From: Schizochytrium sp. TIO01
Taxonomy: Eukaryota > Protista > Bigyra: Labyrinthulomycetes
NCBI GenBank assembly: GCA_004764695.1
Contig: SMSO01000034.1
Span: 868,001 to 932,000 of the forward strand
Length of the DNA: 64,000 bases
Direction: 5' to 3'
Under the pieces are notes generated by a model, which worked only from the letters and a program-made list of their open reading frames with translations, was not told where the DNA came from and did no database searches. A program made the translations under genes and the position numbers. Below are positions 42,130 to 59,852 of this stretch, piece by piece (the stretch's first letter is position 1; each line of letters opens with the position of its first letter).

Positions 42130-43770
42130 CTACAAATAAACATTCTGGGGAGCAGCCTGTTCCATAAAAGAAATCGGAGAAGATTCAAAAGTTCTATCCA
42201 TGGACTCAGGGCTTGCTGACCATGGTGAAGATGGTCCAAACTGATTGTGCCCAAAAGATTCCAAAGTTGGGCCATTTAACACTGGCGGCAGGTATGGAGC
42301 GCTCTCATGGGATTGTTTTTGGTGTTTGATTGGTACCTGCGTACTGCAGACATTGGGTTGGTGCTGTTGTTCCTTTTGCTGTAAGAAGCTTAGGATATGC
42401 GGGGAGGACGACGTAATATTTGAGGGCTCAAAGTTGTCGAATGAAGCCGAGGACGGGATGCTACCCTTTTCGAAGTCGATGCTCTCGCGAAAGCGGTATG
42501 CAAGCTCTTCTTCATCATTGCGGGAAAATGCATCTTCATCACCTTCCTCGTGAGGCCAAATGAAGTCACTAGAGTTCGAGTGCATACGGCCAAACCCAGG
42601 TGCACGAGGTTGAAAGAAGGTACCTTGTTGCTCTTGCAGAGGCTGTCCACTCACATCAAGAAAATCTGACGGAAGCTTAAGTGAGTCGTCGGCAAAGTCA
42701 ATGCAAAATCCACAAGGTGTCGCGTTTTGCATAAGGGGGTTAGATGAACACGTGCAGTTCATGAATTCCAGAGAACTCTGACTCAAGCTCGACAATGATG
42801 AGTGGCGACGTGAGTGATACTCCATGTACGGGCCATTGGTATAGTACTGAGAGTCAATGGAACCAGAGCGCATGAACATGCCACCTTCCCCGCCTTGTCG
42901 CTGAAGTTGGTGTTGATGTTGTTGCTGCTGCTGGTGGTACTGCTGCTGCCTAATCATGGTTGGGGGATAAGCAGATGCAGACATCGATGAAGAAGAGACC
43001 GACGAAGCAAAAGAGCCATAGGAAGGCATCGACGAGGAAGAGGCTACTGAGCAAGCTGAGGACAGTGAATGCGCAAAAGACCCAAAACAGTTTTCATCTC
43101 CAAAACCTCGGTTATGAAGAGAGTGAGAGGTAACGTCGTCAATTTCAAGTGAGAGCGGCTCTCCTACATGGGTTACCATATGAGATTTCATAGGAATGGG
43201 AGCAGCAATGGTAGTTCGGCTTTCACGGTCTGCCCAACATACCCCTTCAGGAAGTGCACGCTGTGGTTGTTGTTGTGGCTTTTGCTGCTGTCGCGAATTA
43301 TGGTAATGAACATCTTTAGAAGAACTTGTAGTTGTATCTTCATGTTCCAGGGTGAACTCCGGAGGGCATTCGGCTTCAGGACCTACATGAACCGAGCTGG
43401 TGTTACTTGAAGTAGAGTCCTTGCGGCGACGGGTTTCAGAGTTTGAAGAGGAAGATGATGAAGCAGGATTGATAGGTGCTGCGACGGGCTTGCCTTTGAG
43501 GCGACCCTCGAGCTGGCGACGACGAATATCATTCCACTTTTCGAGCTCACCAACACCATGCGCGAACTGGCATTTTTCGCTGTACGGGCATTTGCCTTCA
43601 CGAACCCAATTACGGCACATCTTGGCCTTGTACCTCGGATTGTGGATAGGGCCTGTAGTCTTCTTGCGACATCTTTGGTCATCTTTTAAGTCAACGCTGC
43701 TGCCACAACAACTGTCACCGCTGCAGCAGCTGCTGACGCTGCTGGTGCTGTTTTCGCGATCACCTGCCAT
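42130..43770 (-). CDS. TIS11/ZFP36-like CCCH zinc-finger RNA-binding protein (single finger)
   Basis: RYKAKMCRNWVREGKCPYSEKCQFAHGVGEL is a YKTxxC-type lead-in plus C-x8-C-x5-C-x3-H. The remainder is Ser/Gln-rich low complexity. Confidence 0.85.
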   Translation of the reverse strand: MAGDRENSTSSVSSCCSGDSCCGSSVDLKDDQRCRKKTTGPIHNPRYKAKMCRNWVREGKCPYSEKCQFAHGVGELEKWNDIRRRQLEGRLKGKPVAAPINPASSSSSSNSETRRRKDSTSSNTSSVHVGPEAECPPEFTLEHEDTTTSSSKDVHYHNSRQQQKPQQQPQRALPEGVCWADRESRTTIAAPIPMKSHMVTHVGEPLSLEIDDVTSHSLHNRGFGDENCFGSFAHSLSSACSVASSSSMPSYGSFASSVSSSSMSASAYPPTMIRQQQYHQQQQQHQHQLQRQGGEGGMFMRSGSIDSQYYTNGPYMEYHSRRHSSLSSLSQSSLEFMNCTCSSNPLMQNATPCGFCIDFADDSLKLPSDFLDVSGQPLQEQQGTFFQPRAPGFGRMHSNSSDFIWPHEEGDEDAFSRNDEEELAYRFRESIDFEKGSIPSSASFDNFEPSNITSSSPHILSFLQQKEQQHQPNVCSTQVPIKHQKQSHESAPYLPPVLNGPTLESFGHNQFGPSSPWSASPESMDRTFESSPISFMEQAAPQNVYL

Positions 43771-45870: not shown

Positions 45871-48564
45871 GTCTGCGCCCTCGTAAGCCTTGGCTCCAGG
45901 GGCTTACGCGTGCGCAGACCGTTCTCCGTCGAATCTCTAAGCCCTGCGCGGGATACGAGGCTGCTGCGAAACGCCCCTTCGCAGCGAGGGCCCTTCGCTT
46001 CGCCTCGCGGCGGCGGTGCTCTGCGAATACTCGCATCACGAGCTGGCGGCGGTCTTGACGACCCACGGGACCGAAGCGTCAACGGTGGAATCTCCAGCGC
46101 CTCAAATTCCGGGCAGCGACTCCTACCGTGCCCCGCCTCGGGACCGGCCGCCAGGGACAGCTGCGGGCAAAGAGGGGGGCTCTGTGGAACTCCCTAGGAG
46201 GGTGTACGCCAGAAAGAATCTAGAGGTCTCCTTTGTGTACACCCCCTCGCAGAGTGTCCCCGGCAGTTTTGGGGCGAGGGGGTCTCGTAATGGGGGGCAT
46301 TGTGGGAGAGGTGCAGAGGAATCTCGCCGCATCTTTGGCGCCGATGACTGAAGAAAGGAAGAAAGAGTGATTTTGTTCACCAAAATAAAAATTGTATCAT
46401 TTTCTATTTTTTAAAAATAATATGATATATATATATAATTCAATTCACATTTTTTCTCACAAAGAAATATAATAGTAAGAGCAAAGAAAAAAGGAACGAA
46501 ATGCAATTGTTATCGTGAACGAAAGCAATGGATTGACTGACTGATCGGTCGCTCCATCACTCCACCACTCCATCACTAAAGAACATGCACCCAAAGCTTG
46601 CTTTGGGCGGAGAGGAGCATCTCGAAGGGCCGGGGGTCCAGGCGCAGTACTGACCACCAGACTCGACATGACGAGGTTAGATTGCTCCTTCGAGCGAGGA
46701 AAGCGAGCGCTCTTGAGGTGGCGAACTTGTAAGAAGGCTGAAGATCCACAGGTTCCTACGGCCTGCGCGAACTCCACGACGACGACGACTCACACATTCC
46801 ATTCACGACGAGCAGAACTTGGTTTCACGGCAGCCAGAAGGTAGGCGGAGTGTCGCCTGCCTGCGTGCTTGCTTGCTTGCTTGCTCGAACTCCGTCGAGG
46901 ATATTTATTTGCAGGTCGATCAGCTTGCCAGGGGGATGTATGGATGGATGGGTGTCCAGGCAGGGCACACGCCGGGGCTCGTGCTCGACTGGAGGCAGAC
47001 CGTCCACCTGCCGAGAAAGTTCGCCCTGCCCGCCGAGAGCTTAAAGTTCTAAGCAAGCAGGGCGCCGATCGCAAGAGCGGTTTCGTCGCGAAGATCTTGC
47101 CTGCCTGCTTGCAGGGCTCGCGCGGGTTCTTGGCTGGCTCGCTGAGATGAACTCCTTGCGGCCGCTGAGCTTGCCGCTGAGCTTGCCCTCGATCGAGCGC
47201 GCCTGAAGTCAGGGAGGCGCTTCAGACTAAGAGCCCCAGGTGCTAGCGAGCGTGGGCCTGCGCAGCGCATCTCTGGTGTCCGCTCGCGAGGGCACCGCAT
47301 CTGCGGTTCCGCACTCCTCAGAGGACCTCGGGATCCTTGAGCAGAGACCTTGAGCCTTCCGCCTGCTTTCAAAGGCGTACGGTAGCCGGAGCATCGCGAT
47401 GGGCTCTAAGCCCTGGCGCCAATTCGGCGCAGCGCAGAGAACCAGCCTCGCGGTCGCCCACGTGCCGCTGGCGCTGGCGGGCAACTGGCCTCCTGCGGCC
47501 CCTGCGACTCCTGTGGCTCCCGCGACGTCTGTCTCTTTGGCCAGCTCCAGGAGGTCCTCCTCGACGACCTTGGCCGCCCAAGCCCAGAACCGGCGAGGCT
47601 GCGAGGCGATCGATGCCTTCTGCTCGGCAAGCGCGGACCTCGGCGCTGCTCGTACCCTGTGCAAAGCTTCCCTAACATCTTCGCACGCCCGCTCGCGGAT
47701 GCGGGGTTGCCAAGCGGGCCAGCGAGCTAGCTTCCTGAGCTGTAAGACGCTCGCCACCGCGGAAGAGCTCTGCTCTGCTCTGAAATGCCGCTGTTGCTGG
47801 TCGTCGGTCGCACGGCCGAACCTTTGACTGCCATTGAGAACTGCGATGGGGGTCTTCTCTGGCCAGCTTGGGCTTGCGGCGGTGGAGCCCGACGCCCTGG
47901 CGTCTTGCCTTGGCGTCTTGCTGTTCCCGCGTGAGGCTCCAAAAGCAGCCGCGACGCCTGTGCGAGAGACAGACCTCTATACGGCGAAGACGAATCAGTT
48001 CTTCGCTTGGCCAAGTACACACCCACGAGCGCACCCAATGCGGTTCTTGCAGGAAATGAGGAGCAAAAGGATTCGCGCTGCAGTCCGAGGTCTCGAGAGG
48101 CGGGCGGGTACATTAGATTAGAAGCGAGCAAGTTCTGCTCTTTCGCGTGGTCATATGTGTGTATGTAGTATATGTTTGCTCGACTTTGTCAGTCTGATTG
48201 AGCTTTGCGTGGGAAGATAGCTTCGGGTTGACTAGGCTCCCTGACCTCAATTTGACACGGTCGAAGATTCCTTCTTCGTAGCAAAGAGACAGTCGTTTTG
48301 AAGAGCTAAAATTATTTTTTTTAAATTATTTTTTTTAATTAAAAGTTTTTGAAGTTTTGCTTGAAGGTAGTAGTAATTTATTTTTTTTACTTCTAAAAAT
48401 TAAAATTGTCTTGAAAGTAAAACAAGAAGATCAAAATTGTGGGACTGTGTTTCCCATGTTTTCTCAGTTCTTCGAGTGGAAAGTAGGTAGCTATGTTATT
48501 ATGTGGAAATGAAAAGAAAATATGTTTGTTCAAGTTGGGCCAACATCATGCATGCATGGATCAT

Positions 48565-51500
48565 TCATGACCAAATGTCACGCTTGTAGCGACCACGCTT
48601 AGTCATTTCGTCAAGCTTTGCCTGCGCATCAACCTGGCCGAGACGACCATACTTAACAAGACACTCCACAAGTGCCTGATTTACATCCTTCGCCATAGAC
48701 ATGCCATCGCCACAGACATAGATGAAACCATCTAGCTCCATAATATGACGCGCCACGCGCTCGCCGTCCTCCTTGAGCAAGTGCTGCACATACACCTTTT
48801 CGGTACCTTGGCGGGAGAAGGCACAGCGTAAGTTGCCCAACACATCGCCTGCACGTGCTTCGCGTTCGAGATAATCCTTGAACAAGAAATCCTTGTTTTC
48901 ATACCTGCAACCAAAGTACAGGTCGAGTGGAGTTACTTCGGACTTGAGTTCTTGCTCAGGCTCAAATGCCAGGCTTGAGGCGATATCTGCCGCTCGAAGG
49001 CGGCGGCCTCCCCGCCAATAGCCCTCGTATAGCTCTCCTTGAATCGATTCCTGGGCTGTCTTGAGAAACTTGCGATGTTCAATAAAGCCAACGAAAGGCG
49101 CCACGCCAGTGCCAGGTCCAATCAAAATCAGAGGAATCTCTACATCGCCAGGCAAGTGGAAAGCAGTTGAGTTGCGAAAGAACACCTGAACTCGTGGGGC
49201 AGGTGGCCGAGTAGACTGAACGCGGCCCATCTTCCGCAGAACAGCATCCAAAGCGGCAGGGCGGGCACCCGGAAGACCTGCACCACTTGATGAGGCACCT
49301 TGCATAACCTTTTCTGCGAGACTCTCCATCCATGATGTACAAAGGCCACGAACAATACGTGTTTCGCCCTGCCGTCCTGCCAGCTCTGTCTCTACGACAG
49401 TCATGGCAATCGTTACATGCCGGTATCCACCAGGACCTAGAGGCGAGTTTGCGACAGAGTAAAAGCGCGGTGCGAGCTTGGGCAAACTGTGCAGTAAGTT
49501 TTCCAACGGGGGATGGCACGAGGGAAAGAGATCCAAAATCTCGAGTAGAGTTAACTGCTGTGCCTCAACGAGCTTCGTGAAAACACCACGCCCTTTAAGA
49601 GAGCTCAGGTAGCATAAACGTGCCTTTTCAAGAGGATCCGAACAATACTCAGACAGCATTCGAAAGAGCGCCTTACGCGGGGTCGAGGTCATGTCTACAC
49701 CCCAGGTGAAAATCTTCTCAAGGCTTGTGACTGGGTCAAGGTTTGAGAACATTGGGCGCTCCTGGCTCTGTGTAGCACCTGCAGATCCAGCTGGTCCGCG
49801 GGCACGGGTCGTAACCTCGACTTGTGTAGCACCATCTAGATTCAAGCGCTTAAGAACTTTTTGCACGAGTACCTCAGGGTTTGGGCAAACCACTCCCAAG
49901 GCGTCACCAGGGCTCCACTGTGCCGGAAACTCGGGGAATTTGAGCTCTAAGTCGATCTGAAGTACGCGCTTTACATCTTCACCTTGAGACATATATTTCG
50001 CTTTTGCAAGTTCAGCATCAATCGGGTGAGAAGCTGAAGAACCTGCGACACTCGATGGTGACTCAATGGAGGAAGACCGAAAACGATTTAACCGCCCGCT
50101 GTTTGGTGCATTTTGGCTATTGGCGAGTGCGGTTGCTGCTTCAGCTGCTGAGACCTCACGTACACGAGCAAGGCAAGCCTCTAAGTTGCCAGTTCTGCCG
50201 GTATTCTTTTCAATCTCTTCAACTGTAGAGAGTTCACAAACATCCGCAAAGCCCAGAGGAGAGCCAGCCTCGCGCCACCCATACTTCCCTTGACCAGGAT
50301 GAATTGGGTTTGGAGAACTCGGAGCGGCCGCTGCTGCTGTTGCTGTTGGAATTGGCGCGCGTTGAGCAGCAGCAGCAATTTTGATGGGTAGGCCGGGAGG
50401 TTGTTGAACACCAGCAGGCCGAGCTGTCGATTTCGTTCCTGTTTGCACATCTTGGCTATTATTCTCCATCTTAGAAGCACGAGATGCTCCTCCTGTTACA
50501 CCAATTGACTCAGGAAGACCCACAGGTTGCTTGATGGATGATTGCGGAAGCGCAGATTTCACTTCAGGCTTAGATTCCCTTGTAAGGGCAATAGGTGGCT
50601 TGTTAGATGCGACTGGGCTTGGTTGAGACGCCTTCTTCTCTGCCTGTGCACGTTTGTAAATTTTACCAAGCCAAGGCTCAACAAACTGATCAAGACCTAC
50701 AGCTTCATCAGCACGCGTCATTGGAATCCATTGCGTGGCACCGAGTTGAGAAAGTCGTCGCTCCAGAGAGACTCCAGCGGCACAAAATTGGTCGTAGTTG
50801 GTGTCACCAAGAGCTAGTACAGCATATCGCAAATGCTGCAAAAGGTTTTCCGGATGTGACCTTCGGCGAATGAAGCGCATCATGGCTTCAGCGTTACGGG
50901 GAGGTTCGCCGTTTCCTGTTGTTGAAATGACAAAAATAACCTCTTTAGCTTCAAGGAAGCCAATCTTTTTATAGTCATCCATGCGGGCAATTCTAGCAGG
51001 GACCTTGAGTTCTCCAAGTTTCTCAAAGACTTGTGTAGCGATTGCTTCTGCATTTCCAGTTTCAGACCCATACAAGACCATGACTTCACTGTCAAACGGC
51101 TCAAAGCTGTCGCCCTCGGATGATTGGCTGCTTGAAGCATTGTCTATAGTAGATGAATTCTTTTGAGAGTCAGTACTCTCGATATTGCTCTCAGGAATAG
51201 TAGCAGCTTTTGTAGCTGTTGCTACTGCTGCTGCTGCTGCTGCTGCAGGTTCTACTTGAACAGAAGAAGCAGCTGCAGGTAGCGTCAAATTGATGTCAGG
51301 CACCTCGGTTGGCGCTGTCTTTAACGAGGTGGTAGAAGAAGCCACCTCTGTTTTGTTTGATGATGTCCTAGAAGAAGCATTCACAAGAGAGTCCCAAAGA
51401 GACTTTTTCCAAGGTTCTACAACCTGGTCAAGGCCTACAGCTTCATCCGCGCATGCCACAGGGAGTATACGTTGAGCTCCTAGCTCCTCCAGGCGTTTAT

Positions 51501-52527
51501 CAATGCGCTTGCCAGCATGGCAAAATTGATCATAGTTTGTGTCGCCCAATGCTAGTACGAGATACTGCATCTTCTCCAAAAGTGTTGCCGGCTGGGTCCG
51601 CCGACGTAAAAATCGCCAACAGGTATCCGCGTTGCGCGGGGGTTCCCCATTACCCGTGGTGGAAATAACAAATATAGCGAGAGTTTGCTCTGGAAGTTTG
51701 TAATCTTTAAAGGCATTCATCTCGGCAAGCTGGGAACTAAACCCATGCTCCCCAGCACTTTCGTGCAATTGTGTGGCGATAGCCTCTGCATTGCCAGTTT
51801 CTGATCCATACATGATCAAGAGCTCCCTAGGTCCACTTTGCGTTTTTTCGGCACTATCCTCACCCCGCGGTGTGGAAGTTGATTCTTGTTTAGTGCTAGT
51901 TTGGTTGCCTGAATTTGTAACGGCATCTTGCTGTTTGGGAACCTTACCTGAAGGTTCGCCGCTAGTATTACTAAATCCTGCAGGGGCAGTCTCCGCAGAG
52001 GGCTTGTTAATTCTTGATTCTGTGTCTTTCACCTCCTGCGATTCTACGTTGCTGGCAAGATGCTTGCGCAAGACATCCCAAATACCAATACGCCATGGCT
52101 CCACTGTTTTTTCCAAATCAGTACCCTCATCCGCGCAAGCCACTGGGAGGAGCCTTTGTGCACCGAGTTGATTCAAGCGCTCGTCTACACGTTTGCCTAC
52201 AAGGCAAAATTGGTCGTAGTTAGTATCACCGCATGCAAGGACAGCATATGCTGTGTTTGCCAATAAGGTGTTGGGGTGAGTTCTGCGCCGGATGTAACGC
52301 ATGAAGCGGTCTGCATTGCGCGGAGGTTCACCATTCCCAGTCGTGGATGTCACTATCAGCACGAGGCTTGCGCTTTCGAAGCCAACCTTTTTGTAGTCAT
52401 CCAGAGGCGCAAGAACTCCTTTAAATCCTTCTTCATTGCTGGCCTCGTACAGACCTTCTGCAATAGATTGGCAATTGCCTGTCTCAGAGCCATAAAGAAT
52501 CAGTACGCTTGGTTTAGCTGATGACAT
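48565..52527 (-). CDS. MTRR: Methionine synthase reductase-like diflavin reductase with three tandem flavodoxin domains (~1320 aa)
   Basis: Three copies of [YGSETGN / STTGNGEPPRNA / GDTNYDQFC / ADE...VEPW]. FAD domain: PGDALGVVCPN, IFTWGVDMTSTPRKALFR, FPSCHPPL..LPKLAPRFYS. NADPH domain: IGPGTGVAPF, YFGCR, YVCGDG, C-terminal RYKRDIWS. ATG at 52527; the track start is TTG. Confidence 0.85.
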   Translation of the reverse strand: MSSAKPSVLILYGSETGNCQSIAEGLYEASNEEGFKGVLAPLDDYKKVGFESASLVLIVTSTTGNGEPPRNADRFMRYIRRRTHPNTLLANTAYAVLACGDTNYDQFCLVGKRVDERLNQLGAQRLLPVACADEGTDLEKTVEPWRIGIWDVLRKHLASNVESQEVKDTESRINKPSAETAPAGFSNTSGEPSGKVPKQQDAVTNSGNQTSTKQESTSTPRGEDSAEKTQSGPRELLIMYGSETGNAEAIATQLHESAGEHGFSSQLAEMNAFKDYKLPEQTLAIFVISTTGNGEPPRNADTCWRFLRRRTQPATLLEKMQYLVLALGDTNYDQFCHAGKRIDKRLEELGAQRILPVACADEAVGLDQVVEPWKKSLWDSLVNASSRTSSNKTEVASSTTSLKTAPTEVPDINLTLPAAASSVQVEPAAAAAAAVATATKAATIPESNIESTDSQKNSSTIDNASSSQSSEGDSFEPFDSEVMVLYGSETGNAEAIATQVFEKLGELKVPARIARMDDYKKIGFLEAKEVIFVISTTGNGEPPRNAEAMMRFIRRRSHPENLLQHLRYAVLALGDTNYDQFCAAGVSLERRLSQLGATQWIPMTRADEAVGLDQFVEPWLGKIYKRAQAEKKASQPSPVASNKPPIALTRESKPEVKSALPQSSIKQPVGLPESIGVTGGASRASKMENNSQDVQTGTKSTARPAGVQQPPGLPIKIAAAAQRAPIPTATAAAAAPSSPNPIHPGQGKYGWREAGSPLGFADVCELSTVEEIEKNTGRTGNLEACLARVREVSAAEAATALANSQNAPNSGRLNRFRSSSIESPSSVAGSSASHPIDAELAKAKYMSQGEDVKRVLQIDLELKFPEFPAQWSPGDALGVVCPNPEVLVQKVLKRLNLDGATQVEVTTRARGPAGSAGATQSQERPMFSNLDPVTSLEKIFTWGVDMTSTPRKALFRMLSEYCSDPLEKARLCYLSSLKGRGVFTKLVEAQQLTLLEILDLFPSCHPPLENLLHSLPKLAPRFYSVANSPLGPGGYRHVTIAMTVVETELAGRQGETRIVRGLCTSWMESLAEKVMQGASSSGAGLPGARPAALDAVLRKMGRVQSTRPPAPRVQVFFRNSTAFHLPGDVEIPLILIGPGTGVAPFVGFIEHRKFLKTAQESIQGELYEGYWRGGRRLRAADIASSLAFEPEQELKSEVTPLDLYFGCRYENKDFLFKDYLEREARAGDVLGNLRCAFSRQGTEKVYVQHLLKEDGERVARHIMELDGFIYVCGDGMSMAKDVNQALVECLVKYGRLGQVDAQAKLDEMTKRGRYKRDIWS

Positions 52528-54027
52528 TTTACTTTCCTCGCGGAAGTAGTACTGCAATCTCGCGAAACTTTTTCGATAATGAAATGAAGTTCAGTATTTT
52601 CTAGACAACTTGATACGTCTTTGATACTGACCCTACTCTTATGACTCTGGCTGGTGCAATTTCTTTCTTGCTTTTGCAGTGAACACCTGGCGACTGGTTT
52701 GCACGAGCGTGCAATCAAACCAAACACTACTAAATCTTCAGGACTCCAGGAACCTGGTTTCCTATAGGCACGAGGACGTTAGCGATGGCTCGGGACCAAT
52801 GGCTTCAAGCCTTTTCTGGCCTCTGGTCCCTGTGCTCGCCGCAGCTTGGGTTTCAAGTGGCGAAAGAATCTCCAATTTGTTCGAGCTTTGCAGGTCCTCT
52901 CGTTCTGGTCTCGGCGCTTTTCTTCATTAAGCGAGGCGTGTCCATAACTTATAAATTACCCCTAGTTTGAGCCTCGTATTTTCATTTTGGGGGGCATTGT
53001 ATAACGACGCCTTCAGATTAATACAAACAAAATACTTTGGGTAGAACAATGCCAGAAGCCAATATGATACATTCGCGTAGTTGGAAGGTCACTTTAAATT
53101 GACAAAGTCCAAAGACCCTCTTTCGGAAAGATAGTACTACTCTTGATCACCATCAACATTGATTGCTCATGTATTCTGACATATAGGCTAAACATTAATG
53201 AAGCTAGTGTGAACTCCTATAGTTATGTGGTTGAATAGTTTGGCTTTACATTTCATCTGTTCAACATATTTCCATATTATTTTTGCTTTAGTTGCTTTAG
53301 TTGAGTCAAAAGTGATGGATGTTATGCCTTTAGTTTTGACAAGTTTTTCATTCTAAAGCATTGCTTTGGGGCTTGGGGTAATCTCGCATTGGTGAAGGAC
53401 GCAATATTGTCTCTATCGATGAGTATTTATCTATACATTCACTTTCGAAGCACATGTAGTATAAAATTTACTTGGAGTAAAGTCCCAAGCTGGCTTGCAT
53501 TCTCGACCAAATCTTAGTTCTATAGAACTCTGTGCTTAGAGAAGCCAATTTTTCTGACCTTTCAAATTTTGGTATGAGCATCACAATCCGCTTTGCGAGC
53601 TTTAAAAAAGTAAGTGAAACAAGTAGTAGAACAAAAATTCGGAACGCCTCTGGAACATCCTCTTTCTCTTAAGCTTCTGTAACCAGAGCCTCTCCTATAC
53701 TATGGGCCAAAACACCTTTACTATAGGTAGTAACACTCACAAGTGAACTATATAATGCTATAACCAATAGTATCAGTATCTTATTGACTTAAAACTCATA
53801 GAAACAATTTGGATAAGCTTTGACAGATTGATCGAAATAGATCCTTCCTTGACATAACCCAAACCAGCTCAAGAGCCGCTTTTCTCTTTGCTGCCGTCAC
53901 CTTCATCAACGTCGCTACTGGTCTCCCTGCGCTATTTGCTGCTGGTCCTGGCCTCCCTCACCTTGCACGCGCACCTCCTCTTTCGTCCTGGGGGCCGTTC
54001 GTTTATTCTCTCGCGCCGTCGTCCGCC

Positions 54028-54945
54028 ATGTCACAGCCCATCCGCGCCGTCATCACCGGGAACCGTTTGGTGAACGAACACACGGAGTACCGCGTGGAGC
54101 TTTGCGCCGGCGCTGCCAAGCTTTCCTCTGTGTCACGTCGTTTCCGCGAATTCGTGGAGCTCCACGCGCAGCTCTCTAAGTTCCGTCATGCCTTCGCTAT
54201 TCCTGACGTGCCTCCCAAGAAATTTTTCGGCCGCACCAACCCGGATTTCGTTCTCCGTCGCCAGCGCGAACTTCAGGCCTTCTTGGACAAGCTTGTCAAC
54301 AGCATCGTTGCCAACCCTCCAGCAGAGGCCGCATGGCGTTTGCTATGCCTCTTCCTCGCGCTCGACCCAAAGCAGTACGTGCCTGAGTCCATCCTGAACC
54401 TCGCAGACCAGTCTGCAGGCACGCGCCGCGAGGATGATTCTGCAGCTGGCGCAAACAATGGCGCTGGCAATGCCTCCAGCAATGGCGCAGGCGCGCCTGG
54501 AAACCCTGGATCCCGCGGTGCGAACGCAGGTTCTGCGAATAACGGGGCTGGTGGAGCTGGTGCTGGAGGCGACGATGGAGAAGATGCGGACGCGGCAAGT
54601 TTGGAGGCCGAGGAAATGAGGCGTATGGACAGGATTGTGGACGCTTTTGCAAGGCAGACAATTAATGTGAGCAGAAACACGGAGGAGAGACTGCAACACG
54701 CGCCAGCGACCCTGGTTGACAGGATTCCGGTCAAGGCGCTCCAGGAGACTCTGCAAAAGTATGTGCTGGACGCCCCTCTTAAGATGTCGAGGAGAGGTGA
54801 GGACGAAGTTGCGGAAGACGGAGAAAGTACGAATGCAGGTGAGGAAGGAGTGGCGAATGAGGCTGAAGAGAGTGAGCAGACTGAGATTGCCCCGATTCAG
54901 GGTGCAGAGGAAGTTGTTGTGCACCTCGAAATGACCACCGAGTGA
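54028..54945 (+). CDS. PX (phox homology) domain protein, sorting-nexin-like
   Basis: HTEYRV...VSRRFREFVELHAQL...PDVPPKKFFGRTNPDFVLRRQRELQAFL; followed by a Gly/Asn linker and an acidic tail. Confidence 0.85.
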   Translation: MSQPIRAVITGNRLVNEHTEYRVELCAGAAKLSSVSRRFREFVELHAQLSKFRHAFAIPDVPPKKFFGRTNPDFVLRRQRELQAFLDKLVNSIVANPPAEAAWRLLCLFLALDPKQYVPESILNLADQSAGTRREDDSAAGANNGAGNASSNGAGAPGNPGSRGANAGSANNGAGGAGAGGDDGEDADAASLEAEEMRRMDRIVDAFARQTINVSRNTEERLQHAPATLVDRIPVKALQETLQKYVLDAPLKMSRRGEDEVAEDGESTNAGEEGVANEAEESEQTEIAPIQGAEEVVVHLEMTTE

Positions 54946-58100: not shown

Positions 58101-59852
58101 ATGAAGGACTTCGTGCTGATTGAGGAACTCGCGAGAGGATCAAAGGGCAGTGTGTGGACAGCGCGTCGAAAACATTCTGCAAAGCACACAAACCATGGCC
58201 GGGAAGAGATCGAGGGATACCCGAGAGTGGGTTTCTCGGGGCGTTTCGCGGCGAATAGATCTCGAATTTATTGCAGTGAAGCTACTACTGAAGCAGACCT
58301 CAAGGCGGAGAGATTTACGAAATGTACGAACAGAGGTGACGGTCAGCAGACGGAAGAAGAGGACAGCCTCGTCGTGCTGAAGGAGCGTCGAGTGGCAGAG
58401 CTGGGGAGAGGAAAGTCCGTGATGAACGAAGTTGAACTTCTCCGGAAAGTTGACCACCCCCACGTGGTTAAGCTGCTTAGCAGCTTCACAGAGAAGGGGA
58501 TTCTATGGATGGAGTTGGAATACGCTCCACATGGAGATCTCGGTCAGGAAATCGCACGACGAGCCAAGCAGGGGCTCGAAAGAGCAGCGTTCACACATAC
58601 CCAGCTATGTGGAATGTCGATACAAATCATGAGTGCGCTGGCCTGCTTACATACGAACCGAGTAGTGCATCGCGATATCAAGAGCATGAATATCTTCATT
58701 TACTCTGCTTCGTCTAGTACGCCAGTAGAAGTGCCAGTGCGAGGCATCATTGCGCAGGAACCTCATTCTCGCGAATACGTTTTGAAAATTGGAGATCTCG
58801 GGGTTGGTCGGTCATGCTCGCAGAACACGTACGAGTTAAAAACCTTTTATGGCACCCCTCTGTATGCTTCACCTGAAATATGTGACAATCGTCCATATGA
58901 CTATCGCACAGACCTTTGGTCTTGTGGCGTTCTTGTCTACGAAATGTGCGAGCTGAAACATCCCTTTAGCGGGTCCAGTTTGTTGGCTCTTGCGCAAGCC
59001 ATTGCATCTTGCAAGTATGATCCTCCAACGTACGGAGATGAGACACTCTGCGAAATCATTCAAGGTCTTATTCAGGCGGAAGCTAAAAAACGAACCCCTT
59101 TGAGCCAGGCTCTGGCATTGCTGCGCAGAGATCTCGAAGACTTGCAAAACCATGCCCTGGAGAAGCCTCCAAACTCGTGGAATACAGAGCAGGGTAGTGC
59201 AGAAAACTCTTCGAACAACAAGACACAGCCGGGTGATAGTGCAGATGATGATTGTGTTCTTTTTAAAGAGTCAGCCCAGCTTGCTTTGACTGAGATAGAT
59301 CAGGACAACTGTTTATCACCGAGAAGCTCCTCACCAAAACCTATTAGACAAGTGGATGCCGAGGCGACACCAGAGCGCCCACGTCTCTCCCAAGCTGGGC
59401 GCTGCCGCATTGAGGCTGAGCTCAAACGAAAGCGACTCAAACTTAAAAATTTGACATCCTGGATGGACGCACAGGTCGATGCACCTGACGGCGAGTTTGG
59501 ACATAGCAACATAGAATTAGATTCCTTGTATGATGAAATTGCTAGATTAGAAGGCATGCTGTTGGGAGCATCTCTAAGCCACGCATCTCGCACGCGAACT
59601 ATGATGCCAAAAAGTGCAAGCACAACAGCACTTCCACGACCCAAAGATCTTGCTCGTTTGCAGCCTACGCCTAAACCCTCGAATACCACGAATAGCCAGG
59701 GCAGCGCCATCGATAGTTCACCTTGTAGTCGGGAAGATGAGGAGGATCTAGAGCGCAGTCAAAGAAGACGCGAAGCACGGCTTGCTGCTCGCTTACGGGC
59801 GCATCAAGCTTTACGAGACAAGTCAAGCTCTGTTGCCGAACACCACAATTAG
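58101..59852 (+). CDS. NIMA-related (NEK) Ser/Thr kinase
   Basis: VVLKE, NEVELLRKVDHPHVVK, HRDIKSMNIF, KIGDLG, GTPLYASPEICDNRPYDYRTDLWSCG..YEMCELKHPF; C-terminal coiled segments. Confidence 0.9.
   Translation: MKDFVLIEELARGSKGSVWTARRKHSAKHTNHGREEIEGYPRVGFSGRFAANRSRIYCSEATTEADLKAERFTKCTNRGDGQQTEEEDSLVVLKERRVAELGRGKSVMNEVELLRKVDHPHVVKLLSSFTEKGILWMELEYAPHGDLGQEIARRAKQGLERAAFTHTQLCGMSIQIMSALACLHTNRVVHRDIKSMNIFIYSASSSTPVEVPVRGIIAQEPHSREYVLKIGDLGVGRSCSQNTYELKTFYGTPLYASPEICDNRPYDYRTDLWSCGVLVYEMCELKHPFSGSSLLALAQAIASCKYDPPTYGDETLCEIIQGLIQAEAKKRTPLSQALALLRRDLEDLQNHALEKPPNSWNTEQGSAENSSNNKTQPGDSADDDCVLFKESAQLALTEIDQDNCLSPRSSSPKPIRQVDAEATPERPRLSQAGRCRIEAELKRKRLKLKNLTSWMDAQVDAPDGEFGHSNIELDSLYDEIARLEGMLLGASLSHASRTRTMMPKSASTTALPRPKDLARLQPTPKPSNTTNSQGSAIDSSPCSREDEEDLERSQRRREARLAARLRAHQALRDKSSSVAEHHN

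What the first reader, a model, noticed from the sequence alone, without database searches (positions are those of the whole stretch)
48565..52527. MTRR-like reductase with three intact tandem flavodoxin domains on one FAD/NADPH module
Seen: three ~145-aa flavodoxin domains (approx. 52510-52060, 51825-51380, 51090-50650) separated by long Ser/Thr/Ala/Pro disordered linkers, then one FAD- and NADPH-binding module. All three keep identical FMN-binding motifs (YGSETGN, STTGNGEPPRNA, GDTNYDQFC, VEPW), yet differ at surface residues and at synonymous codon positions. This argues for an old triplication under purifying selection, not an assembly artefact. Established: diflavin reductases (CPR, MTRR, NDOR1, NOS reductase, CysJ) normally carry one FMN domain, and the TTGxG loop, IFTW and DIWS motifs point to MTRR, which reactivates cobalamin-dependent methionine synthase. 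Inference: a multi-shuttle electron-distribution protein. The tethered FMN domains could buffer electrons, act as a relay, or serve different partners (METH, cobalamin processing, cytochrome b5/desaturases).
Basis: partly seen in the sequence, partly recalled or inferred. Interest (0 to 1): 0.85.

Follow-up and report, generated by a model that had tools for sequence, protein, structure and literature searches.

The report
Methionine synthase reductase with three flavodoxins
A marine protist (a thraustochytrid) makes one long enzyme in which three separate FMN-carrying "shuttle" domains hang on flexible tethers from a single NADPH/FAD engine of the type that re-activates vitamin-B12 methionine synthase. 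The gene is real and expressed, but such 2- to 6-shuttle versions turn out to be common and unstudied in protists.

Summary
Window 48565-52527 (-) is one intron-less 1320-aa ORF with 3x Flavodoxin_1, one FAD_binding_1 and one NAD_binding_1.

- **Age of the triplication:** the three FMN domains are only 49-53% identical with saturated dS. Each pairs with its positional counterpart in Hondaea, so the triplication is old and not an artefact.
- **Expression:** transcript-like contigs from four studies cover the whole gene unspliced.
- **Identity:** the FAD/NADPH module is MTRR by sequence (human MTRR 241 bits vs CPR 171), by fold (2qtl top hit) and by tree (one clade with named MTRRs, excluding CPR and the genome's NDOR1-like paralogue).
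- **Not unique:** MTRR-clade proteins with 2-6 flavodoxin domains occur in diatoms, labyrinthulomycetes, Aphanomyces, Paulinella, Euglena, diplonemids, a trypanosomatid, Cyanophora and a haptophyte. They mostly arose independently. One paper mentions the Volvox three-domain form as uncharacterised.
- **Partner gene:** the presumed partner METH in this genome carries three near-identical Hcy+folate modules on one B12 domain. The scan already reported this elsewhere in this genome (s1-828309).
- **Mechanism (inferred):** parallel tethered FMN shuttles that raise METH re-activation capacity.

Verdict: a real, expressed variant of a known enzyme kind. No biochemistry exists for it.

The parts
48565..52527 (-). 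Complete intron-less CDS, 1320 aa plus stop: (Fld)x3 - hinge - FAD - NADPH
   Evidence: 98% identical to a complete 1318-aa MMETSP transcript ORF, P0001
48355..52866 (-). Approximate transcript extent (3' UTR about 205 nt, 5' UTR about 340 nt), unspliced
   Evidence: contigs of 4508, 4399 and 4502 nt from three studies lie at 48359-52866, 48402-52803 and 48355-52862. No joints were found. Neighbouring genes sit on separate contigs at other depths. That the runs are RNA is the tool's guess.
52048..52515 (-). Flavodoxin/FMN domain F1 (residues 5-160)
   Evidence: pairs with Hondaea F1 (SH-aLRT 99, 78% identity)
51832..52047 (-). Disordered linker L1 (residues 161-232), rich in Ser/Thr/Pro/Glu
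   Evidence: pLDDT below 30; poorly conserved against Hondaea
51364..51831 (-). Flavodoxin/FMN domain F2 (residues 233-388)
   Evidence: best solved match is the NDOR1 FMN domain 4h2d at E 4.8e-30, with all FMN loops aligned; pairs with Hondaea F2 (SH-aLRT 97)
51094..51363 (-). Disordered linker L2 (residues 389-478), including an Ala run that splits one assembly at 51209-51257
50626..51093 (-). Flavodoxin/FMN domain F3 (residues 479-634)
   Evidence: pairs with Hondaea F3 (SH-aLRT 99)
50290..50625 (-). Disordered hinge L3 (residues 635-746)
   Evidence: low conservation against Hondaea; carries 9 of the 17 non-synonymous strain differences listed
50104..50289 (-). Conserved, structured N-terminal extension of the FAD module (residues about 747-808; GW[RK]...CLA.V element)
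   Evidence: conserved in labyrinthulomycete MTRRs whether they have 1, 2 or 3 Fld domains; pLDDT 73-96 in the model
49330..50034 (-). FAD-binding plus connecting domain (Pfam FAD_binding_1, residues 832-1066), including IFTW and the RFYS FAD motif
48679..49125 (-). NADPH-binding domain (NAD_binding_1, residues 1135-1283) with GPGTGVAPF and a lineage-specific insert of about 45 aa after it
48568..48579 (-). C-terminal DIWS (the FAD-stacking Trp of diflavin reductases)
   Evidence: aligned to the identical C-terminus of human MTRR, 2qtl

Best explanation
This is the organism's only methionine synthase reductase (MTRR).

Shown: one expressed polypeptide carries three intact, anciently diverged FMN (flavodoxin) domains, separated by 72-112-residue disordered tethers, in front of one MTRR-type FAD/NADPH module.

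Inferred from the established MTRR mechanism: NADPH reduces FAD. FAD reduces an FMN domain docked on the FNR-like module. That FMN domain swings out and gives one electron to cob(II)alamin on the Cob/Act half of B12-dependent methionine synthase (METH), allowing SAM-dependent re-methylation.

Inferred for the triple form: the three FMN domains work in parallel. Each docks in turn on the single FAD module and then searches for METH. One reductase therefore stores more reducing equivalents and presents a several-fold higher local concentration of reduced shuttles to the rare, transient re-activation state of METH. Tandem carrier-protein domains raise flux in thraustochytrid PUFA synthases in a comparable way. 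The need may be raised here because the partner METH has three substrate modules per cobalamin, so it would have more turnovers and oxidative inactivations per B12 site.
For: Architecture and intact FMN loops in triplicate.

MTRR identity: human MTRR 2qtl scores 240.8 bits against 171 for the best CPR on the FAD module, and 2qtl is the top fold match (E 2e-41, TMt 0.88). The closest named relatives are all 'methionine synthase reductase' from oomycetes, Mucoromycota and animals. In the FAD-module tree the gene falls inside one clade (SH-aLRT 97) with named MTRRs and outside CPR, SiR-FP, P450-CPR and the genome's own CPR-like and NDOR1-like paralogues. It is the only MTRR-like gene, and the only multi-flavodoxin gene, in the 64-Mb genome.

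Partner present: METH is in the genome.

All three domains are under selection. F1, F2 and F3 are each 70-78% identical to the positional orthologue in Hondaea, while the linkers are barely alignable. 36 columns, including all FMN loops, are invariant across 9 domains from 3 genera. Strain differences are 10 synonymous to 5 non-synonymous in folded domains, against 6 to 12 in linkers.

Expression as one unit.

A general selective benefit tied to MTRR: FMN-domain amplification arose independently in many lineages, and every multi-flavodoxin protein placed in the FAD-module tree falls in the MTRR clade.

Carrier-domain dosage precedent: PUFA output rises with ACP number (PMC5067506).
Against: There is no biochemical evidence of any kind. 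METH has only one Cob/Act site, so there is no stoichiometric reason for three shuttles. The complex prediction of F1 with the FAD module gave no verdict. 22 alignment columns are conserved within a position but differ between F1, F2 and F3, and the copies have not been homogenised. This hints at position-specific roles rather than simple dosage. Hondaea and Mucochytrium have 3 Fld domains but 2 METH modules, so any numerical matching is loose. An earlier scan note reports a MetE-fusion gene in this genome, so METH/MTRR may not be strictly essential.
Confidence: 0.55

Rival explanations
1. The shuttles are sub-functionalised. The three FMN domains have diverged to serve different acceptors: one re-activates METH, and others reduce cobalamin during loading or processing (an MMADHC/MMACHC-type route) or reduce other acceptors.
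For: The triplication is old and each position keeps its own conserved identity. 22 columns are fixed within a position but differ between positions; for example F3 has T/VRADE and Q/RW where F1 and F2 have ACADE. F1, F2 and F3 each pair with the Hondaea orthologue. An MMADHC homologue exists in the genome. Human MTRR is reported to bind MTR through several surfaces and to have chaperone or loading roles (PMC13376404).
Against: In other lineages the repeated domains are nearly identical (P0121 with six copies, P0122, Paulinella F1/F2), which fits dosage rather than specialisation. No second acceptor has been identified. MMACHC was not detected, though that search is inconclusive. The genome has separate CPR-like and NDOR1-like reductases for other acceptors.
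Confidence: 0.25
2. The domains form a serial relay. Only the proximal F3 docks on the FAD module, and electrons hop F3 -> F2 -> F1 to extend reach.
For: The linear arrangement. F3 is the most divergent of the three (longest stem) and differs near the FMN-adjacent ADE loop.
Against: I know of no precedent for FMN-to-FMN transfer between flavodoxin domains in diflavin reductases. The tethers of 72-112 disordered residues are long enough for every domain to reach the FAD site. Relay gives no obvious gain when domains have near-equal potentials. Six-copy arrays of identical domains are hard to explain as a relay.
Confidence: 0.08
3. Only one FMN domain is catalytically relevant. The others are spacers, solubility or regulatory modules, or FMN stores.
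For: METH has a single Cob/Act site. Single-domain MTRRs suffice in animals, fungi, Peronosporales and some labyrinthulomycete sequences.
Against: The FMN phosphate loop, the isoalloxazine loops and the stacking Tyr are essentially invariant in all 9 domains from three genera. The one exception is a YASATGN phosphate loop in Mucochytrium F2. Folded domains show fewer non-synonymous strain differences than linkers.
Confidence: 0.07
4. It is not MTRR but a general cytosolic diflavin reductase (CPR- or NDOR1/Tah18-like) with extra FMN domains.
For: The closest solved FMN domain is NDOR1 (4h2d), although no MTRR FMN-domain chain appeared among the PDB hits. The NCBI record for Hondaea names it 'NADPH--cytochrome P450 reductase'. 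The ESM Atlas feature search ranks NDOR1, MTRR and CPR clusters equally.
Against: The FAD-module sequence, fold and tree all place it with MTRR. The genome has separate CPR-like (C30) and NDOR1-like (C24) genes that fall outside the clade. There is no membrane anchor.
Confidence: 0.05

Closest known systems
Human methionine synthase reductase (MTRR; FNR-like module 2qtl/2qtz)
   Same: Same domain order (FMN - long flexible hinge - connecting/FAD - NADPH). The FAD module is its best sequence and fold match. IFTW, R-x-Y-S, GPGTG-x-APF and the C-terminal DIWS are shared. It is soluble, with no membrane anchor, and METH is present as partner.
   Different: Three FMN domains instead of one. Much longer disordered tethers. 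A lineage-specific structured element ahead of the FAD module and an insert of about 45 aa in the NADPH domain.
Multi-flavodoxin MTRR-clade proteins of other protists (Hondaea and Mucochytrium 3; diatoms 2; Aplanochytrium 2; Aphanomyces 2; Paulinella 3; Euglena 2; diplonemids 2-4; Leptomonas seymouri KPI88999.1 5; unnamed P0121 6; Volvox Vocar.0018s0107 3)
   Same: (Fld)n followed by one FAD/NADPH module. Those placed in the FAD-module tree fall in the MTRR clade, and all are uncharacterised.
   Different: The copies mostly arose independently. In several (P0121, P0122, Paulinella) the repeats are nearly identical. In this gene they are 49-53% identical and positionally orthologous only with Hondaea (and F1 with Mucochytrium).
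NDOR1 / Tah18 (FMN domain 4h2d)
   Same: It is the closest solved FMN domain (E 4.8e-30), sharing the S/ATTG-x-G-(D/E)-PP loop with Thr where CPR has Tyr.
   Different: The FAD module is not NDOR1-like: the genome's own NDOR1-like gene (C24, 609 aa) falls outside the clade. NDOR1 has one FMN domain and feeds the cytosolic Fe-S assembly pathway (established knowledge).
NADPH-cytochrome P450 reductase (CPR) and other diflavin reductases (NOS reductase, CysJ, BM3)
   Same: Same superfamily, electron path NADPH -> FAD -> FMN -> acceptor, and a swinging FMN domain.
   Different: They have one FMN domain and a short hinge; CPR has a membrane anchor. Scores are lower on the FAD module (171 bits or less, against 241).
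E. coli flavodoxin + flavodoxin reductase re-activating MetH
   Same: Same chemistry: an FMN carrier donates one electron to cob(II)alamin on MetH.
   Different: The bacterial carrier is a free, diffusible protein present in many copies per reductase. Here several carriers are tethered to the reductase.
Tandem ACP domains of thraustochytrid and bacterial PUFA synthases (analogy only)
   Same: Repeated small carrier domains on flexible linkers serve shared catalytic domains. Output scales with carrier number (PMC5067506). They occur in the same organismal group.
   Different: Unrelated fold and chemistry (acyl carrier rather than electron carrier).

Membership tests
Diflavin reductase superfamily | Flavodoxin-type FMN domain followed by FAD_binding_1 and NAD_binding_1 on one chain | tested here: met
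   Pfam: Flavodoxin_1 x3, FAD_binding_1, NAD_binding_1, all above cut-off
Diflavin reductase superfamily | Intact FMN-binding loops (phosphate loop, two isoalloxazine loops with stacking Tyr) and FAD/NADPH motifs (R-x-Y-S, GxGxxP, C-terminal Trp) | tested here: met
   Loops align to NDOR1 and CPR FMN-domain structures and are identical in all three copies. RFYS, GPGTGVAPF and DIWS align to human MTRR.
Methionine synthase reductase (MTRR) | FAD/NADPH module orthologous to MTRR rather than CPR, NDOR1, NOS or CysJ | tested here: met
   2qtl scores 240.8 bits against 171 or less for others. 2qtl is the top fold hit. Named MTRRs are the closest relatives. The clade has SH-aLRT 97 and excludes CPR, SiR-FP, P450-CPR and the genome's own paralogues. 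Caveat: no verified NDOR1 FAD module was available as a reference, only the genome's NDOR1-like gene.
Methionine synthase reductase (MTRR) | Long flexible hinge between the FMN domain and the FNR-like module; soluble, without an N-terminal membrane anchor | tested here: met
   The hinge at residues 635-746 is little conserved; the model begins at residue 735 and its first 12 residues have pLDDT below 50. The protein starts 11 residues before the first FMN loop.
Methionine synthase reductase (MTRR) | Co-occurrence with cobalamin-dependent methionine synthase in the genome | tested here: met
   METH is at G000:C31:7528196-7536793. Canonical METE was not detected.
Methionine synthase reductase (MTRR) | NADPH-dependent reductive re-activation of METH-bound cob(II)alamin | not testable with these tools
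   Needs an enzyme assay
Methionine synthase reductase (MTRR) | A single FMN domain (as in every characterised member) | tested here: not met
   Three domains. This is the variant feature. It is shared with many uncharacterised clade members.
NADPH-cytochrome P450 reductase (CPR) | N-terminal membrane anchor; Tyr in the ATYGEG FMN loop; FAD module in the CPR clade | tested here: not met
   No anchor. Thr replaces the Tyr. The gene lies outside the CPR clade, and the genome has its own CPR-like gene with ATYGEGDP.
NDOR1 / Tah18 | FAD module orthologous to NDOR1; about 600 aa; one FMN domain | tested here: not met
   The genome's 609-aa NDOR1-like gene (C24) is a distinct lineage outside the MTRR clade. 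Only the FMN domains resemble NDOR1.

The most novel reading that the evidence does not exclude
MTRR and METH may have co-evolved as a 'B12-economising' pair in B12-using protists. On this reading METH multiplies its Hcy+folate substrate modules (2-4 per single cobalamin domain, kept near-identical by concerted evolution) to get more turnovers out of each scarce B12 molecule. MTRR multiplies its tethered FMN shuttles (2-6 per FAD module) to keep that harder-working cobalamin reduced. Multi-domain forms co-occur in the five pairs I could make: this genome 3:3, Volvox 3:3, Nitzschia 2:2, Hondaea 3:2 and Mucochytrium 3:2. In animals both are single (established knowledge). If this holds, the domain number in one gene would predict the other across eukaryotes.
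Probability: 0.3. Interest if true: 0.85.

Novelty: new variant of a known kind. Interest (0 to 1): 0.6.

Why it matters
All mechanistic work on diflavin reductases (CPR, NOS, MTRR, CysJ) assumes one FMN domain that alternates between a closed, electron-accepting state and an open, electron-donating state. Natural enzymes with 2-6 FMN domains per FAD module would test that model directly. Relevant questions include competition for one docking site, electron storage, and rate limitation by domain motion.

These enzymes are apparently unstudied, although they are present in ecologically and industrially important organisms: thraustochytrid DHA producers, diatoms, green algae and trypanosomatids. 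Amplification has recurred independently, and every multi-flavodoxin protein placed in the FAD-module tree is an MTRR. METH also shows module amplification. Together these point to an unrecognised layer of adaptation in eukaryotic B12-dependent methionine synthesis, relevant to B12 limitation in the ocean and to B12 supply in thraustochytrid fermentation.

Tried and rejected
- **Assembly or annotation artefact: rejected.** The copies are 49-53% identical with saturated dS. The same architecture appears in an independent MMETSP transcript and in Hondaea and Mucochytrium. Single contigs from several studies span the gene.
- **Alternative transcripts that skip domains: no evidence.** No joints were seen. 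However, these were assembled contigs whose RNA nature is only the tool's guess, so rare isoforms cannot be excluded.
- **Complex prediction (F1 against the FAD/NADPH module): no verdict** (score 0.00, controls not run). This counts neither for nor against binding.
I could not pair unnamed METH and MTRR proteins by sample.
- **Taxid lookup unusable.** Taxid 87120, read from a truncated MMETSP header, resolved to an unrelated fungus. I did not use it. From memory, MMETSP0960 is Aurantiochytrium limacinum; this is unverified.
- **ESM Atlas feature search was uninformative.** It returned only generic NDOR1, MTRR and CPR clusters of about 600-700 aa.
- **Literature searches** for tandem or multiple flavodoxin or FMN domains, MTRR in thraustochytrids or trypanosomatids, and duplicated METH modules found only the passing Volvox mention. 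A 1600-genome survey of B12 genes does not mention domain multiplicity.
- **Strict B12 auxotrophy: softened.** PF01717 gave no hit, but earlier scan note s1-824451 reports a MetE-fusion gene in this genome, and the family is published for labyrinthulids.
- **The MMACHC search was inconclusive.** Nothing rang in the controls either.
- **Gene neighbourhood gives no functional clue.** The flanking genes encode a CCCH zinc-finger protein, a PX-domain protein and a protein kinase.
- **Domain-number counts among hits are not prevalence estimates.** A three-domain query favours multi-domain hits, and the length windows of the searches exclude some forms.

Full report
**Observation.** The window holds one open reading frame on the minus strand, 48565..52557. 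Its first ATG is at 52527, giving a 1320-residue protein with no internal stop. Pfam finds three Flavodoxin_1 stretches (E 7e-101 for the family), one FAD_binding_1 (residues 832-1066) and one NAD_binding_1 (1135-1283).

The three domains (residues 5-160, 233-388, 479-634) are 49-53% identical in protein and 51-57% in DNA. More than half of the identical residues use different codons, and dS is saturated. An AlphaFold2 model of residues 1-640 shows three separate alpha/beta domains (block pLDDT mostly 70-91). The linkers 161-232 and 388-473 have pLDDT below 30.

**Expression.** A protein 98% identical (P0001, 1318 aa, three domains) is a complete ORF on a 4353-nt MMETSP transcript. Contigs of public runs from four studies were laid on 47600-53500. 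In three runs a single contig of 4399-4508 nt begins at about 48355-48402 and ends at about 52803-52866. In the fourth run it is split only at an Ala-codon repeat (51209-51257). The flanking genes lie on separate contigs with different depths, and no joints were reported. This pattern is what transcriptome assemblies give, although the tool only guesses that the runs are RNA. It indicates an unspliced message of about 4.5 kb covering all three FMN domains and the FAD/NADPH module.

**Identity.**
- With the FAD/NADPH part alone as query, the best solved relative is the FNR-like module of human MTRR (2qtl, 240.8 bits). The best CPR scores 171 bits, and NOS, BM3 and CysJ score less. IFTW, the R-x-Y-S FAD motif, GPGTG-x-APF and the terminal DIWS align with human MTRR.
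- A model of residues 735-1320 (pLDDT 84.8, pTM 0.82) finds 2qtl and 2qtz as the top fold matches (E 2e-41, TM 0.88 on the target).
- In the 5.8-billion-protein search the nearest named relatives of this module are all 'methionine synthase reductase' (oomycetes, Mucoromycota, fish, insects). CPR and sulfite-reductase names appear only near E 1e-31.
- In a maximum-likelihood tree of FAD modules the gene lies in one clade (SH-aLRT 97) with the named MTRRs. Outside that clade are CPR, P450-CPR fusions, SiR flavoproteins and the four other diflavin paralogues of the same genome, including a CPR-like gene (C30) and an NDOR1-like gene (C24).
- The FMN domains are closest to the solved NDOR1 FMN domain. 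They share its S/ATTG-x-G-(D/E)-PP loop, the phosphate loop and the stacking Tyr. No MTRR FMN-domain chain appeared among the PDB hits for comparison.
- It is the only MTRR-like gene, and the only gene with more than one Flavodoxin_1 domain, in the 64-Mb genome.

**Age and selection.** In a tree of 66 flavodoxin domains, F1, F2 and F3 each pair with F1, F2 and F3 of Hondaea fermentalgiana (SH-aLRT 99, 97, 99; 78, 74 and 70% identity), and F1 also groups with Mucochytrium F1. The triplication therefore predates the split from Hondaea.
- Across nine domains from three genera, 36 columns are invariant, including all FMN-binding loops. A further 22 columns are fixed within a position but differ between positions.
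- Against Hondaea, the folded domains are well conserved and the linkers barely align.
- Among the strain differences listed by the read tool, folded domains carry 10 synonymous and 5 conservative non-synonymous changes. Linkers carry 6 and 12.

All three domains are thus under purifying selection.

**Not unique.** I counted flavodoxin domains with an HMM built from the three copies. Among the 252 proteins returned by two searches there were 145 with one domain, 87 with two, 7 with three, 1 with four, 6 with five and 1 with six, besides two with no full-length domain and three multi-domain fragments that lack the FAD module. These are not prevalence figures, because a three-domain query favours multi-domain hits.

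Named examples include:
- Hondaea and Mucochytrium (3);
- Aplanochytrium (2);
- the diatoms Thalassiosira and Nitzschia (2);
- Aphanomyces (2);
- Paulinella (3);
- Euglena (2);
- the diplonemids Flectonema and Artemidia (2) and Lacrimia (4);
- Leptomonas seymouri KPI88999.1 (5; annotated 'methionine synthase reductase ... precursor-like');
- Cyanophora (2);
- Diacronema (2).

Those I placed in the FAD-module tree all sit inside the MTRR clade. The domain tree shows that most arrays arose independently within lineages, with near-identical copies in P0121, P0122 and Paulinella.

The literature is almost silent. One paper on Volvox alternative splicing notes a gene with three flavodoxin domains plus an FAD domain. 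[quoted passage not shown] A 1600-genome survey of B12 genes does not mention domain number (PMC11439496). Other searches found nothing.

**The partner.** The genome encodes METH as one 2865-residue ORF (G000:C31:7528196-7536793). It has three Hcy (S-methyl_trans) plus folate (Pterin_bind) modules, then one cap, one B12-binding domain and one activation domain.
- The three modules have a 753-residue period and are 95.6-98.3% identical in DNA.
- METH proteins with 2, 3 or 4 such modules are widespread: diatoms, Hondaea, Mucochytrium and Aureococcus have 2; chlorophytes, Chrysophaeum and Polarella have 3; Haematococcus and Bryopsis have 4.
- In 14 species the modules cluster by species at 85-100% identity, i.e. 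concerted evolution.
- The scan had already reported this METH elsewhere in this genome (s1-828309). My result agrees with it independently.
- Canonical METE was not detected. I therefore do not claim strict B12 dependence.
- An MMADHC homologue is present.

**Mechanism.** What is shown is the architecture, its conservation, its expression and its family. The electron path NADPH -> FAD -> FMN -> cob(II)alamin on the Cob/Act half of METH is taken from established MTRR biochemistry and from recent work on the human complex (PMC13376404).

For the triple form I favour parallel tethered shuttles (confidence about 0.55). Each FMN domain sits on a 72-112-residue disordered tether, long enough to reach the single FAD docking site. 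Recurrent independent amplification, often of identical copies, points to a dosage benefit. The tandem ACP domains of PUFA synthases, where output scales with carrier number, give a precedent for such a benefit (PMC5067506).

The old divergence and the position-specific conservation in this lineage keep sub-functionalisation alive as the main rival (0.25). Serial relay (0.08), vestigial extra domains (0.07) and a non-MTRR reductase (0.05) are less likely. A complex prediction of F1 with the FAD module returned no verdict and is not evidence either way.

**Most novel reading.** MTRR shuttle number and METH module number may be linked. In the five pairs I could form, both are multiple: this genome 3:3, Volvox 3:3 (the paper plus P0428), Nitzschia 2:2, Hondaea 3:2 and Mucochytrium 3:2. 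Both are single in animals (established knowledge). No oomycete METH of 1577 aa or more appeared among the top hits, while their single-domain MTRRs are abundant; this is weak evidence from absence. A plausible link is that more substrate modules per cobalamin mean more turnovers, and so more oxidative inactivation per B12 site, which raises re-activation demand. The sample is small and the numbers do not match exactly, so I give this 0.3.

**Limits.** There is no biochemistry. The RNA nature of the runs is a guess. The trees are quick searches with SH-aLRT support only.

**Verdict.** This is a real, expressed, anciently triplicated multi-FMN MTRR. It is a variant of a known enzyme kind, shared with many protists but essentially uncharacterised.

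Noticed in passing
G000:C31:7528196-7536793 (+) = L010:197-8794, outside the window: METH is one 2865-aa ORF with three Hcy+folate modules (period 753 aa, 95.6-98.3% nt identity), followed by one cap, one B12-binding domain and one activation domain. The scan already reported it as s1-828309.
   Followed up: yes
Proteins P0362-P0481: METH with 2-4 Hcy+folate modules is widespread (diatoms, thraustochytrids, pelagophytes, chlorophytes, dinoflagellates). Within each of 14 species the modules are 85-100% identical and cluster by species, i.e. concerted evolution of an intragenic repeat of about 2.2 kb.
   Followed up: partly
window 50104-50289 (-), residues about 747-808: A conserved, confidently folded element (GW[RK]..P...F..V......L......RP.N..CLA.V) sits between the disordered hinge and the FAD barrel. 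It is shared by labyrinthulomycete MTRRs whatever their flavodoxin number. It could be an extra docking or partner-binding surface.
   Followed up: partly
window about 48930-49080 (-), residues about 1150-1200: A lineage-specific insert of about 45 residues lies in the NADPH domain after GPGTGVAPF. It is absent from human MTRR and conserved in Hondaea. It is partly low-confidence in the model.
   Followed up: no
P0136 (Leptomonas seymouri KPI88999.1, 1984 aa); P0127, P0041, P0130 and P0138 (unnamed, about 1600-1700 aa): Five-flavodoxin proteins. Leptomonas (P0136) is the trypanosomatid. P0127 and P0041 fall in the MTRR clade next to the diplonemid Lacrimia and Euglena in the FAD-module tree; P0136, P0130 and P0138 were not in that tree. 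Their inner domains are highly divergent (long branches).
   Followed up: partly
P0121 (JGI, 1839 aa): Six almost identical flavodoxin domains in a row (branch lengths 0.03 or less), with only a fragment of the FAD module on the contig. This is the largest array seen.
   Followed up: no
P0228 (Cyanophora paradoxa model, 4122 aa); P0040, P0057 and P0078 (PDZ-containing or long N-terminal extensions): Some multi-flavodoxin reductases are predicted as parts of much larger proteins or carry PDZ domains. These may be gene-model fusions or real fusions.
   Followed up: no
Labyrinthulomycete clade (P0004, P0005, P0006 with one Fld; P0123/Aplanochytrium with two; P0484, 1048 aa, in the P0005 cluster): Flavodoxin number is labile inside the clade. 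One-domain forms interleave with three-domain forms, and their single domains group weakly with different positions (F2, F3). This suggests losses or incomplete gene models.
   Followed up: partly
G000:C3:771714-790199: Four weak Flavodoxin_1 matches lie in short open frames (204-343 aa) within about 19 kb. This may be a small tandem family of flavodoxin-like proteins.
   Followed up: no
window 47000-48000: A block of 65% G+C lies just downstream of the gene's 3' end, with many overlapping short ORFs on both strands and no long ORF. It is covered by a separate contig at a different depth.
   Followed up: no
window 42133-43770 (-), 54028-54942 (+), 58101-59849 (+): The neighbouring genes encode a CCCH zinc-finger protein, a PX-domain protein and a protein kinase. 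None has a functional link to B12 or one-carbon metabolism. The gene starting near 53185 is on a contig with higher depth.
   Followed up: partly
G000:C30:8787913-8788428 (-): An MMADHC (CblD) homologue is present (68.8 bits). MMACHC was not detected, but that search rang nowhere in the controls.
   Followed up: no
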